Below the pieces are notes generated by a model. It made no database searches. It was given only the letters and a program-made list of their open reading frames with translations, and had not been told where the DNA came from. A stretch of DNA of 63,658 bases, the filler included, from Octopus bimaculoides (taxonomy: Eukaryota): the NCBI RefSeq assembly GCF_001194135.2. It is 6 parts of 6 records of this genome, joined end to end, with 100 filler letters (N's around TTAATTAATTAA, not from the genome) between each part and the next. Parts side by side here need not be neighbours in the genome. Positions count along the whole stretch, not along the records: positions 22,257 to 40,580 come from NC_069004.1; 5 more parts are not named here. One strand, written 5' to 3'. Below, piece by piece: positions 33,463 to 34,452 of the stretch. Numbering within the stretch: position 1 is the first letter of the stretch; every line of letters begins with the position of its first letter. The position numbers were made by a program, and so were the translations under genes.

Positions 33463-34452
33463 TTAGTCCATGTTAATATCATCCATTTGACTGTCACTGT
33501 TTGATGGGACGATGTAGGTTCTGTCTCCATGGATCAGTTGTTTAACACTGTTTCTGATTGTCTTGCTTAACAGCAGCAGCAACATTGGTGCTCCGAAAGA
33601 AGTCCTTTTTGACCAAAGTGCAAATATATAGAGTGAAGTAGGGAAAGCATTCTCGGAAAGGAATTTATTGCTGGCACCAAAAATAAGACATGCGACGACT
33701 AAAGTTCCACTGAAAAATCTAGTTATTATCACCGTGATATCAATCATAAGAATGAATGTTATCATATCCATTAGTTTATCGAAACCGTAGAGAGACATGA
33801 TGTGGATTTTACTGAGTTTTATGTATTGCAAATAAATAAAGAATATCAAAATTGGAAAGGACAAACATGTCGTGAAAGCAAAGCCATATATCTTGAGGTA
33901 CTTACTTACGATGCTGACACAGATATCGGAGAGATGAATGAAGACATGACCCATACGATACCAGTCATTAACGTGGAGATACAACTCGACCGCTGTCGGA
34001 AATGCCCATGAAACTGCACTAGACACCAACATTAATTTTTTAAACTGTGAAGTTTTGTACCAGTTTGGTTTCGCCAATGAAACAGCTTGGTCAAGATTAA
34101 CCAGGATTAAACTGAGCGTTGAAACATCTTCAAATATATCAGTCAGAGTCATGATAATCAGACAGGAGGAATAACTATAGTTCCATCTGTTTCCTGTAGA
34201 GAGCAGCTGAGCTTGGATTGGAAGACCGATGCATCCATAGAAAAAGTTAGCGATGGTAAAGTTCCCAATTGAGAGAAGAAAAGATATTGTATAATTAGCC
34301 CGGCTCCAAAACAACAAGATGCCAACCAAAAGGTTTATCAAAACGGTGAGGAGGGAGAGTAAAGCGGAAACAATGACCAATGAGTCAAGGGTTCCGTTCA
34401 TTTTCATTGCGACACTGCTGTTGAGGTCTGCTTTTTCTTGGTTGACATCCAT
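33463..34452 (-). CDS. Divergent rhodopsin-like (class A) 7TM receptor, single coding exon, 329 aa
   Basis: Intact ORF with caaaATGg start, N-terminal NSS/NGT sequons and seven hydrophobic segments. Landmarks: TM1 N, ECL1 W, C3.25, S3.39, D3.49 (DQA in place of DRY), ICL2 PxxY, W4.50, ECL2 Cys, TM5 and TM7 Pro, helix-8-like SKTIRNSVKQLI. Three AATAAA on - at 33426-33447. Confidence 0.88.
   Translation of the reverse strand: MDVNQEKADLNSSVAMKMNGTLDSLVIVSALLSLLTVLINLLVGILLFWSRANYTISFLLSIGNFTIANFFYGCIGLPIQAQLLSTGNRWNYSYSSCLIIMTLTDIFEDVSTLSLILVNLDQAVSLAKPNWYKTSQFKKLMLVSSAVSWAFPTAVELYLHVNDWYRMGHVFIHLSDICVSIVSKYLKIYGFAFTTCLSFPILIFFIYLQYIKLSKIHIMSLYGFDKLMDMITFILMIDITVIITRFFSGTLVVACLIFGASNKFLSENAFPTSLYIFALWSKRTSFGAPMLLLLLSKTIRNSVKQLIHGDRTYIVPSNSDSQMDDINMD

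What the first reader, a model, noticed from the sequence alone, without database searches (positions are those of the whole stretch)
33463..34452. Atypical intronless class A GPCR lacking DRY, CWxP and NPxxY
Spacing from C3.25 to D3.49 is exact, but R3.50 is Q, TM6 has TRFFS for CWxP and TM7 has GAPMLL for NPxxY. TM3 carries three acids (D3.33, E3.36, D3.37) and TM6/7 carry D, R, K and R, a very polar bundle. The ORF is intact with a Kozak start and polyA signals, so it is probably functional. It may be a lineage-specific chemosensory or orphan receptor, or one with non-canonical G-protein coupling (inference). It is tail-to-tail with PGM on the same segment.
Basis: partly seen in the sequence, partly recalled or inferred. 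Interest (0 to 1): 0.7.

Follow-up and report, generated by a model that had tools for sequence, protein, structure and literature searches.

The report
Conserved orphan cephalopod 7TM receptor gene
This is a real, intact, strongly conserved single-exon gene for a very divergent rhodopsin-type seven-helix receptor, found so far only in octopus- and cuttlefish-type cephalopods, that has lost most of the residues such receptors use to switch on G proteins; its ligand and signalling route are unknown.

Summary
Window 33463-34452 (-) is an uninterrupted 329-codon ORF with a Kozak-like start, an in-frame stop 9 nt upstream and AATAAA signals after the stop.

- **Family:** it belongs to the rhodopsin-like (class A) GPCR superfamily, but only just. 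Pfam 7tm_1 scores 15.9 bits against a cut-off of 30.5. Only class A receptors match in PDB, and a moderate AlphaFold model matches class A structures (TM-score 0.6-0.72).
- **Anchors kept:** N1.50, C3.25-ECL2 Cys, D3.49, W4.50, P5.50, P7.50.
- **Switches lost:** D2.50 (N), R3.50 (Q, or C in decapodiforms), CWxP, N7.49 (A/V/L), Y7.53 (L).
- **Function:** dN/dS is 0.04 against a 95%-identical species. Differences by codon position are 9/10/78. Same-length orthologues (57-60% identical) occur in Sepia pharaonis and other decapodiforms.
- **Isolation:** among 1.84 billion representative proteins only this one cluster is close. The next hits (E ≥ 1.9e-10) are generic class A receptors.
- **Pattern:** it looks single-copy and slowly evolving, unlike a chemosensory expansion.

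Best reading: a coleoid-restricted orphan receptor with a charged, invariant pocket and probably non-canonical signalling. Expression and ligand are untested.

The parts
33463..34452 (-). Complete single-exon CDS (329 codons plus stop at 33463-33465) of the orphan 7TM receptor
   Evidence: intact ORF; orthologues of the same length (329 aa); dN/dS 0.043; differences by codon position 9/10/78
34453..34583 (-). Conserved 5' flank (putative 5' UTR or proximal promoter) with a Kozak-like start context and an in-frame TAA 9 nt upstream of the ATG
   Evidence: alignable to the related species' contig L001 up to 34583; about 71% identity over 150 nt; further upstream it dissolves into microsatellites
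33378..33462 (-). 3' flank with four AATAAA hexamers (33431-33463) inside an AT-rich short repeat; putative polyadenylation region
   Evidence: weak evidence because the region is AT-rich
34390..34422 (-). Short extracellular N-terminus with two N-glycosylation sequons (N11-S-S; N19-G-T). Only N11 is conserved in all orthologues
34246..34248 (-). N69 at position 2.50: the sodium-site aspartate is replaced; invariant in the family
34126..34164 (-). Upper TM3: C97 (C3.25, disulfide partner of C178) through the invariant acidic cluster D105-I-F-E108-D109 (3.33, 3.36, 3.37)
   Evidence: the run MTLTDIFEDVSTLSL is identical in all nine sequences
34087..34098 (-). N-L-D121-Q122 in place of the (E/D)RY motif: D3.49 kept; R3.50 is Q in the octopus-type sequences and C in the decapodiform sequences
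33919..33921 (-). C178, the conserved ECL2 cysteine (45.50)
33709..33741 (-). TM6 core D238...T244-R245-F-F-S248: no CWxP; D238 and R245 are invariant
   Evidence: the register is uncertain by about one residue because no anchor residue survives
33577..33609 (-). TM7 K282-R-T-S-F-G-A288-P289-M-L-L292: P7.50 kept; N7.49 is A/V/L; Y7.53 is L; invariant K282 falls at 7.43
33529..33567 (-). Helix 8 (S296-H308, SKTIRNSVKQLIH), 85% identical to the cuttlefish orthologue

Best explanation
The ORF is a functional, single-copy gene for a very divergent rhodopsin-fold (class-A-derived) seven-helix membrane receptor. As far as public data show, it is restricted to coleoid cephalopods.

**Shown**
- It keeps the structural skeleton of class A receptors: N1.50, the TM3-ECL2 disulfide pair, D3.49, the P..Y of ICL2, W4.50, P5.50, P7.50 and helix 8.
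- It has been under strong purifying selection since octopus-type and cuttlefish-type lineages split.

**Inferred: ligand site**
- The binding site is the invariant, unusually charged cavity built from ECL1, upper TM3 (D3.33/E3.36/D3.37), E156/H160 at the top of TM4, D176 next to the ECL2 cysteine, D238/R245 in TM6 and K282/(R/K)283 in TM7.
- Such a cavity suits a small charged ligand: an amine-like cation, a metal ion or protons. Alternatively it forms an internal salt-bridge network.

**Inferred: signalling**
- The residues that carry activation in canonical class A receptors are gone: the D2.50 sodium site, R3.50, the CWxP toggle, N7.49 and Y7.53.
- Two of these positions drift freely within the family (3.50 Q/C; 7.49 A/V/L).
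- ICL2, ICL3 and the tail are the least conserved parts, while helix 8 and TM7 are among the most conserved.
- So the protein probably does not activate G proteins by the canonical mechanism. It more likely works like an atypical receptor, for example through arrestin-type or other partners at TM7/helix 8, as a ligand sink, or as a subunit of another receptor.
For: **Gene is real and functional**
- intact ORF; dN/dS 0.043 (dS 0.52) against the 95%-identical species and 0.046 between two decapodiform orthologues; differences by codon position 9/10/78; CDS 90% identical against flanks at 71-76%.

**Class A affinity**
- 7tm_1 is the only Pfam hit.
- All 112 PDB sequence matches are class A GPCRs; the best is C5aR1 at 2e-5.
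- The profile search of 1.84e9 proteins returns only 7tm_1 proteins after the family itself.
- hhalign against a hemichordate 5-HT4-like receptor gives probability 93.8%, E = 1.8e-7, over residues 33-314.
- The AF2 model (pLDDT 68, pTM 0.67) gives Foldseek hits that are all class A, with TM-scores 0.60-0.72.

**Motif states and their conservation**
-.

**Isolation and single copy**
- Three 90%-identity clusters and one 50%-identity cluster in the databases.
- No second copy in the 18-kb piece.

**Regional conservation, octopus-type against Sepia**
- High: ECL1 91%, helix 8 85%, TM3 76%, TM7 72%.
- Low: ICL2 40%, ICL3 36%, tail 33%.

**K282**
- It lies on the conserved face of TM7.
Against: - No expression evidence was obtained. 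The short public contigs that carry orthologues look genomic or are ambiguous.
- Pfam 7tm_1 is below its gathering score.
- TM6 to helix 8 has no detectable sequence similarity to any solved structure.
- The AF2 model is only moderate there (pLDDT 55-70), and its alignment was seeded with class A receptors. The fold assignment of the C-terminal third therefore rests partly on that input.
- Loss of canonical G-protein coupling is inferred from motifs only. Some receptors with altered DRY or NPxxY still couple.
- 'Coleoid-restricted' depends on database coverage. Octopus PGM was not retrieved by the word-indexed search, which shows that tool has gaps. Whether Nautilus is represented is unknown.
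Confidence: 0.6

Rival explanations
1. It is a canonical G-protein-coupled receptor for an endogenous transmitter or hormone, for example an amine-like cation. Compensating residues replace the lost microswitches, so it couples normally.
For: - The nearest remote relatives are amine-receptor-like (5-HT4-like, octopamine-beta-like, D3, TAAR1).
- The acidic TM3 pocket would suit a cation.
- Strong conservation and 1:1 orthology fit an endogenous ligand.
- D3.49, the P..Y of ICL2 and helix 8 are retained.
Against: - D3.32 is T104; the acid sits at 3.33.
- D2.50, R3.50, W6.48/P6.50, N7.49 and Y7.53 are all lost together.
- Positions 3.50 and 7.49 vary within the family.
- ICL2 and ICL3 are the least conserved parts, and ICL3 is only about 14 residues long.
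Confidence: 0.2
2. It is an environmental chemosensory receptor (sucker, lip or olfactory organ), one of the lineage-specific class A chemoreceptors of lophotrochozoans.
For: - Single-exon CDS, short N-terminus and degenerate activation motifs are common in chemoreceptor families.
- PDB profile hits include consensus olfactory receptors.
- There is a weak resemblance to an unnamed multi-copy intronless GPCR family that also has N2.50 and no CWxP.
Against: - It looks single-copy, with no tandem array in the piece.
- Only one 50%-identity cluster exists.
- dN/dS is 0.04, and identity is 57-60% between octopus-type and cuttlefish-type lineages.
- The extracellular and pocket residues are the most conserved parts. 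This is the opposite of the high pocket variability reported for lophotrochozoan lineage-specific expansions (PMC11886862).
- The link to the P0022 family is no stronger than the link to generic class A receptors (E = 2.8e-10, TM1-5 only).
Confidence: 0.12
3. It is a retinal-binding (or other aldehyde-binding) opsin-like pigment that uses K282 as the Schiff-base lysine.
For: - Invariant K282 lies exactly seven residues before P7.50, that is at 7.43, like K296 of bovine rhodopsin.
- The only local hhalign alignment to bovine rhodopsin puts K282 on K296, A278 on A292 and P289 on P303.
- There is an acid at 3.37, as with rhodopsin E122.
- K282 faces the conserved side of TM7.
Against: - That alignment is not significant (probability 0.13%, E = 0.45). 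An amine-type receptor aligns at 93.8%.
- No opsin appears among the top sequence or fold matches.
- There is no acid at the known counterion positions: 3.28 is I100, and six residues before the ECL2 cysteine is I172.
- W6.48 and Y6.51 of the retinal pocket are absent.
- The lysine was noticed post hoc among many positions.
Confidence: 0.04
4. It is a decaying or non-functional ORF, a pseudogene or a chance ORF.
For: - Activation motifs are degenerate.
- Pfam score is below threshold.
- No expression evidence was found.
Against: - dN/dS is 0.04 in two independent comparisons.
- Changes by codon position are 9/10/78.
- Orthologues are intact and of the same length in at least five sequence sources.
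- 153 residues are invariant across lineages whose synonymous sites are saturated.
Confidence: 0.02

Closest known systems
Rhodopsin-like (class A) GPCRs, Pfam PF00001 7tm_1; weakly closest to aminergic-like and olfactory-like members
   Same: - Seven helices and a predicted class A fold.
- N1.50, the C3.25-ECL2 disulfide pair, D3.49 at exact spacing, the P..Y of ICL2, W4.50, P5.50, P7.50 and an amphipathic helix 8.
- All detectable homology points here.
   Different: - It scores below the Pfam gathering threshold.
- D2.50 is N; R3.50 is Q/C; no CWxP; N7.49 is A/V/L; Y7.53 is L.
- Three acids sit in upper TM3, plus D/R in TM6 and K/R in TM7.
- TM6 to helix 8 has no detectable sequence match to any solved receptor.
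Atypical or 'decoy' class A receptors with degenerate DRY, such as C5aR2/C5L2 and the atypical chemokine receptors (from general knowledge; analogy only)
   Same: - R3.50 is lost while the rest of the class A scaffold is kept.
- C5aR1 is the best PDB sequence match and C5aR2 also appears.
- The expected consequence is ligand binding without canonical G-protein activation.
   Different: - There is no specific sequence relationship; the similarity to C5aR1 covers TM1-4 at E = 2e-5 and is generic.
- Those receptors keep D2.50, CWxP-like and NPxxY-like motifs far better than this protein does.
- Arrestin recruitment is untested here.
Opsins (type 2)
   Same: Lysine at 7.43, alanine at 7.39 and an acid at 3.37. 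The TM7/helix 8 pattern A...K......P.......K..RN aligns in register with bovine rhodopsin.
   Different: - No significant overall similarity.
- No counterion at 3.28 or at the E181-equivalent position.
- No W6.48 or Y6.51, and no (E/D)RY or NPxxY.
- Chromophore binding is untested.
Unnamed multi-copy intronless GPCR family around P0022 (ENA/JGI assemblies of unidentified invertebrates)
   Same: About 330 aa with a single-exon CDS, N at 2.50, no CWxP, a degenerate NPxxY (DPxxI), and similar TM2-TM4 sequence.
   Different: - That family keeps the D-R-F motif.
- It passes the Pfam 7tm_1 threshold.
- It is multi-copy, with paralogues on one contig.
- It lacks the TM3 acid cluster and the TM7 K/R.
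- The profile-profile score (E = 2.8e-10, TM1-5 only) is no better than for generic class A receptors.

Membership tests
Rhodopsin-like GPCR (Pfam 7tm_1, PF00001) | Score at or above the Pfam gathering threshold (30.5 bits) | tested here: not met
   15.9 bits (E = 0.0097) for the window protein and 24.0 bits for the Sepia orthologue; the match covers TM1-TM5 only
Rhodopsin-like GPCR (Pfam 7tm_1, PF00001) | Significant homology to class A receptors and to nothing else | tested here: met
   PDB phmmer gives 112 matches, all class A, best 2e-5. The profile search of 1.84e9 proteins returns only 7tm_1 proteins after the family itself. hhalign probability is 93.8-96.8%.
Rhodopsin-like GPCR (Pfam 7tm_1, PF00001) | Seven-helix class A fold | tested here: met
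   AF2 gives pLDDT 68 and pTM 0.67. Foldseek gives 332 PDB hits at E <= 0.001; the 50 hits listed are all class A GPCRs, with TM-scores 0.60-0.72. Caveats: the alignment was seeded with class A sequences, and TM5-7 reach only pLDDT 55-70. A four-sequence alignment gave no usable model.
Rhodopsin-like GPCR (Pfam 7tm_1, PF00001) | Structural anchor residues N1.50, C3.25-C45.50, W4.50, P5.50, P7.50 | tested here: met
   N40, C97/C178, W149, P200 and P289 are invariant in the family and align with the anchors of ten other class A receptors
Rhodopsin-like GPCR (Pfam 7tm_1, PF00001) | Activation microswitches D2.50, (E/D)R3.50Y, CW6.48xP, N7.49PxxY7.53 | tested here: not met
   N69; D121-Q122 (C in decapodiforms); (I/V)(T/S)RF in TM6; (A/V/L)288-P-M-L-L292. 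Only D3.49 and P7.50 survive.
Aminergic receptors | D3.32 with an aromatic TM6 cage (W6.48, F6.51/6.52) | tested here: not met
   By the C3.25 and D3.49 anchors, 3.32 is T104 and the acid is at 3.33. There is no W or F cage in TM6. HMMER's alignment to D3R reaches D-on-D only by slipping one residue.
Opsins | Lysine at 7.43 (Schiff base) | tested here: met
   K282 is seven residues before P289 and is invariant. It aligns with K296 of bovine rhodopsin in the only hhalign segment. This is positional only.
Opsins | Counterion at 3.28 or the ECL2 E181-equivalent position, and closer similarity to opsins than to other GPCRs | tested here: not met
   3.28 is I100. Six residues before C178 is I172. 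hhalign to rhodopsin gives probability 0.13%, against 93.8% to an amine-type receptor. No opsin is among the top sequence or fold hits.
Opsins | Binds retinal and responds to light | not testable with these tools
   Needs expression and spectroscopy
Lineage-specific chemosensory class A expansions (lophotrochozoan LSEs) | Multi-copy, tandemly arrayed, fast-evolving, without 1:1 orthologues between distant species | tested here: not met
   One copy in the 18-kb piece. One 50%-identity cluster worldwide. Same-length orthologues at 57-60% identity between octopus-type and cuttlefish-type lineages, with dN/dS 0.04. Criteria are as described in PMC11886862.
Lineage-specific chemosensory class A expansions (lophotrochozoan LSEs) | Expression in chemosensory epithelia | not testable with these tools
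   No tissue expression data could be reached

The most novel reading that the evidence does not exclude
The protein may no longer be a G-protein-coupled receptor at all. It could be a coleoid invention that reuses the rhodopsin fold around a buried, invariant charge network: D3.33/E3.36/D3.37, D238/R245 and K282/R283. One option is a Schiff-base pigment, with K282 at the opsin lysine position 7.43 and a counterion from the TM3 acid cluster instead of 3.28 or E181. The other is a proton or cation sensor or conduit. Neither is excluded by the data, and neither is supported beyond the positional coincidences.
Probability: 0.07. Interest if true: 0.85.

Novelty: new variant of a known kind. Interest (0 to 1): 0.42.

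Why it matters
- **A blind spot in GPCR surveys.** Cephalopods have few lineage-specific class A receptors (PMC11886862). Surveys that rely on the Pfam 7tm_1 threshold would miss this gene, because it scores below the cut-off.
- **A natural test of which residues are dispensable.** The gene is single-copy and has been kept under strong constraint since octopus-type and cuttlefish-type lineages diverged, yet it has lost nearly every activation microswitch. It could therefore show which class A residues are dispensable.
- **A candidate for a cephalopod-specific signalling or sensing function.** If the charged pocket binds a defined ligand, or K282 binds a chromophore, that would be a new receptor type.
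- **Otherwise it is one more divergent invertebrate orphan receptor.**

Tried and rejected
1. **AF2 with only the four family sequences.** It gave an unusable model (pLDDT 37). Adding ten remote class A sequences gave pLDDT 68, but this biases the model towards the class A fold.
2. **PDB profile search with TM6 to helix 8 alone.** Zero hits even at E <= 10.
3. **Opsin test.** It gave only a non-significant TM7 segment.
4. **Species identification through the neighbouring PGM exons.** The word-indexed search returned only short PGM fragments from unrelated organisms and no cephalopod. The source species stays unidentified, and 'not annotated in octopus RefSeq' cannot be concluded.
5. **Expression evidence from Logan contigs.**
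   - The contigs from the 95%-identical species carry upstream microsatellites and look genomic.
   - Sepia contigs share identical 5' ends, and most end about 20 nt after ATTAAA signals. One runs on past that point, and all are collinear with the genome. This is ambiguous.
6. **Synteny with PGM.** No PGM exon lies within 10 kb of the Sepia or ENA orthologues. The flanks are short, so this is uninformative.
7. **Link to the P0022 family.** The family is multi-copy and unnamed, and the profile-profile score is no better than generic.
8. **Variability-moment analysis.** It is informative only for TM7. TM3 is almost invariant and the TM6 moment is negligible.
9. **Literature searches.** They found no description of this receptor.
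Full report
**1. The observation**

The piece contains an uninterrupted minus-strand ORF at 33463-34452 (329 aa, ATG start). It is the longest genuine ORF in the 18-kb piece. The nominally longer ones run through N gaps or microsatellites.

The start context is aaaacaaaATGg (A at -3, G at +4). An in-frame TAA lies 9 nt upstream, so the reading frame cannot extend 5' within this exon.

Four AATAAA hexamers follow within 40 nt of the stop. They belong to an AT-rich short repeat in a genome with about 2 such hexamers per kb per strand, so they are weak evidence.

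- C97 and D121 are 24 apart, which is the C3.25-D3.49 spacing.
- N-L-D-Q at 119-122 makes R3.50 a glutamine.
- D-I-F-E-D at 105-109 gives D3.33, E3.36 and D3.37.
- T-R-F-F-S at 244-248 stands where CWxP should be.
- K-R-T-S-F-G-A-P-M-L-L at 282-292 gives A at 7.49, P7.50 retained and L at 7.53.

D3.49 and P7.50 do survive.

The phosphoglucomutase neighbour is real. PGM exons lie on the + strand, and the last one ends ...LTGRSAPTVIT* at 30696, about 2.8 kb from the receptor's stop. The terminal exons hit PGM C-terminal domains.

**2. It is a functional gene**

A search of 5.8 billion clustered proteins found three related clusters:
- a 95%-identical 329-aa protein from short-read assemblies of a related species;
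- a 57%-identical 329-aa protein of the cuttlefish Acanthosepion (Sepia) pharaonis, CAE1309028.1, which UniProt auto-labels 'G-protein coupled receptors family 1 profile domain-containing protein';
- a 60%-identical protein from an unnamed ENA assembly, whose called N-terminal extension is probably spurious.

Cluster members add a second Sepia-like species.

| Comparison | dN/dS | dS | Source |
|---|---|---|---|
| Window vs the 95%-identical species | 0.043 | 0.52 | |
| Two decapodiform orthologues | 0.046 | 1.23 | |

The 97 nucleotide differences against the 95%-identical species fall 9/10/78 by codon position. The CDS is 90% identical, against 71-76% for the flanks. Synonymous sites are saturated between the octopus-type and cuttlefish-type sequences, yet 153 residues are invariant in all nine sequences. 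A pseudogene or chance ORF is excluded.

**3. What kind of protein it is**

All detectable similarity is to rhodopsin-like receptors, but it is weak.

- Pfam gives only 7tm_1: 15.9 bits for the window protein and 24.0 bits for the Sepia orthologue, against a cut-off of 30.5, covering TM1-TM5.
- PDB sequence search gives 112 matches, all class A. The best is C5aR1 at 2e-5, followed by TAAR1, formyl-peptide, 5-HT2A, beta-3, OGR1 and muscarinic receptors.
- With the family profile, the best PDB matches are consensus olfactory receptors and D3R.
- An exhaustive HMMER search of 1.84 billion 50%-identity representatives found the family's own cluster at 8.9e-193. The next hit is at 1.9e-10, and only 29 hits in total reach E <= 0.001.
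- The ten next hits that were scanned are ordinary 7tm_1 proteins. Those with a source name are a lamprey olfactory-type receptor, a hemichordate 5-HT4-like receptor, a sea-star octopamine-beta-like receptor and a gastropod hypothetical protein.
- hhalign of the family against the 5-HT4-like protein gives probability 93.8%, E = 1.8e-7, over residues 33-314.
- TM6 to helix 8 alone matches nothing in PDB, even at E <= 10.

AlphaFold2 with the four family sequences failed (pLDDT 37). With ten remote class A sequences added it gave pLDDT 68 and pTM 0.67. TM1-4 score in the 80s and TM5-7 score 55-70. Foldseek then returns only class A receptors among the 50 hits listed, with TM-scores of 0.60-0.72. 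The alignment input biases this towards a class A fold, so it is corroboration rather than independent proof for the C-terminal third.

In the 14-sequence alignment, N40, C97, D121, P129 and P200 are invariant columns. W149, C178 and Y132 are nearly so. These are the class A anchors 1.50, 3.25, 3.49, 3.57, 5.50, 4.50, 45.50 and 3.60.

**4. Anatomy and conservation**

Compared with Sepia, identity by region is as follows:

| Region | Identity |
|---|---|
| ECL1 | 91% |
| Helix 8 | 85% |
| TM3 | 76% |
| TM7 | 72% |
| ICL2 | 40% |
| ICL3 | 36% |
| C-terminal tail | 33% |
| N-terminus | 21% |

- The stretch STGNRWNYS..SCL.IMTLTDIFEDVSTLSL.LVNLD is essentially invariant.
- Charged residues inside helices are D105, E108 and D109 (TM3), E156 and H160 (top of TM4), D238 and R245 (TM6) and K282 with R/K283 (TM7). 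All are invariant except the conservative R/K at 283.
- The lost microswitch positions are not fixed. Position 3.50 is Q in the octopus-type sequences and C in the decapodiforms. Position 7.49 is A, V or L.
- ICL3 is only about 14 residues long.
- K282 lies on the conserved, non-lipid face of TM7 by a variability-moment test. The same test is uninformative for TM3 and TM6.

**5. Most likely mechanism**

The steps that are shown are these: the protein is a conserved membrane protein of class A ancestry, its structural skeleton is intact, and its activation motifs are degenerate.

The rest is inference.

- The ligand-facing half is the most constrained part. It carries an unusual cluster of acids and bases, which suits a small charged ligand or an internal salt-bridge network.
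- The sodium site, R3.50, the toggle tryptophan/proline and NPxxY are all gone, and two of those positions now drift. The G-protein-contacting loops are the least constrained parts, while helix 8 and TM7 are tightly kept.
- Canonical G-protein activation has therefore probably been lost. Output probably runs through partners at TM7/helix 8, or the protein acts as a ligand sink or an accessory subunit.
- This is how atypical receptors with degenerate DRY behave (general knowledge). The resemblance is functional analogy, not family membership.

**6. Rivals**

- **Canonical amine-type receptor.** This is possible. However, D3.32 is T104, and the simultaneous loss of five microswitches argues against it.
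- **Chemosensory receptor.** This is disfavoured. The gene looks single-copy and slowly evolving, with 1:1 orthologues and a highly conserved pocket. Lophotrochozoan lineage-specific expansions are tandem, fast-evolving and variable in the pocket (PMC11886862).
- **Opsin-like pigment.** This is an intriguing lead.
  - For: K282 sits exactly at 7.43. The only hhalign segment against bovine rhodopsin puts K282 on K296, A278 on A292 and P289 on P303. None of about 25 non-opsin relatives seen here has K there.
  - Against: the alignment is not significant (probability 0.13%). No known counterion position is acidic. The retinal-cage aromatics are missing. Amine-type receptors align far better.

**7. 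Comparison with known families, and novelty**

The protein belongs to the rhodopsin-like superfamily by homology and predicted fold. It fails the Pfam threshold and the microswitch criteria, and it joins no characterised subfamily.

An unnamed multi-copy intronless GPCR family around P0022 shares N2.50, the absence of CWxP and a DPxxI motif. It keeps DRF, and it is linked no more strongly than generic class A receptors (E = 2.8e-10 over TM1-5).

The cuttlefish orthologue already sits in public databases as an unnamed, auto-annotated protein. No paper describing this receptor was found.

I rate it a new variant of a known kind: a coleoid-restricted (as sampled) orphan clade with an unusually complete loss of activation motifs and a conserved buried charge cluster.

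**8. Limits**

- The source species was not identified.
- Expression was not established.
- Conservation of synteny with PGM could not be assessed.
- The TM6 register is uncertain by about one residue.
- The restriction to coleoids depends on which genomes the databases hold.

Noticed in passing
window 23981-24215, 29396-29626, 29917-30051, 30604-30696 (+ strand): Exons of a phosphoglucomutase-1-type gene lie on the + strand, convergent with the receptor. The last coding exon ends ...LKPLIEIALKISQLPQLTGRSAPTVIT*, and a GT donor follows ...SMDAQ at 30051. Several assembly gaps (N runs) interrupt its introns.
   Followed up: partly
window 34520-34545 and 34570-34600; 35930-36350; 37000-38750: The receptor's upstream region is packed with microsatellites: (CAT/ATG)n about 70 nt upstream of the ATG, (GATA)n blocks from 130 nt upstream and again at 36.1-36.35 kb, and a 1.7-kb (TG/CA)n-rich tract. 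The related species' contig L001 also turns into (CTAT)n-like repeats at the same place, so the repeat block just upstream of the gene is conserved in position.
   Followed up: no
L003 9950-10000 (Sepia pharaonis); also L004 and L014: In the decapodiform orthologues a polypyrimidine tract plus CAG (ttttcctttctctttcag) lies 28 nt upstream of the ATG. The frame stays open upstream, so gene callers produced 355-aa and 377-aa versions (P0008, P0003). This looks like a splice acceptor for a non-coding 5' exon. The octopus-type window has a TAA there and no good acceptor.
   Followed up: partly
L005-L010, L014 (Sepia contigs): Eight independent short-read contigs from two Sepia species start at exactly the same base, 419 nt upstream of the ATG. 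Most end about 20 nt after two ATTAAA signals, about 450 nt after the stop. This could mark transcript ends or repeat boundaries in the assembly graph. One contig (L005) runs on with sequence that does not match the S. pharaonis genome.
   Followed up: partly
L012 10001-11002 and proteins P0070-P0092: This is an unnamed multi-copy family of intronless GPCRs of about 335 aa, in ENA/JGI assemblies of unidentified organisms, with paralogues on the same contigs. It has N at 2.50, no CWxP, DPxxI for NPxxY and extra conserved cysteines. It looks like a lineage-specific expansion that nobody has named.
   Followed up: partly
L004 5046-5843 and 12057-13937: Reverse-transcriptase (RVT_1) ORFs flank the orthologue in the unnamed decapodiform assembly, so retroelements surround the gene there.
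   Followed up: no
window 33802-34011 (+ strand): A 69-aa ORF lies antisense within the receptor CDS. There is no evidence that it is anything but chance.
   Followed up: no
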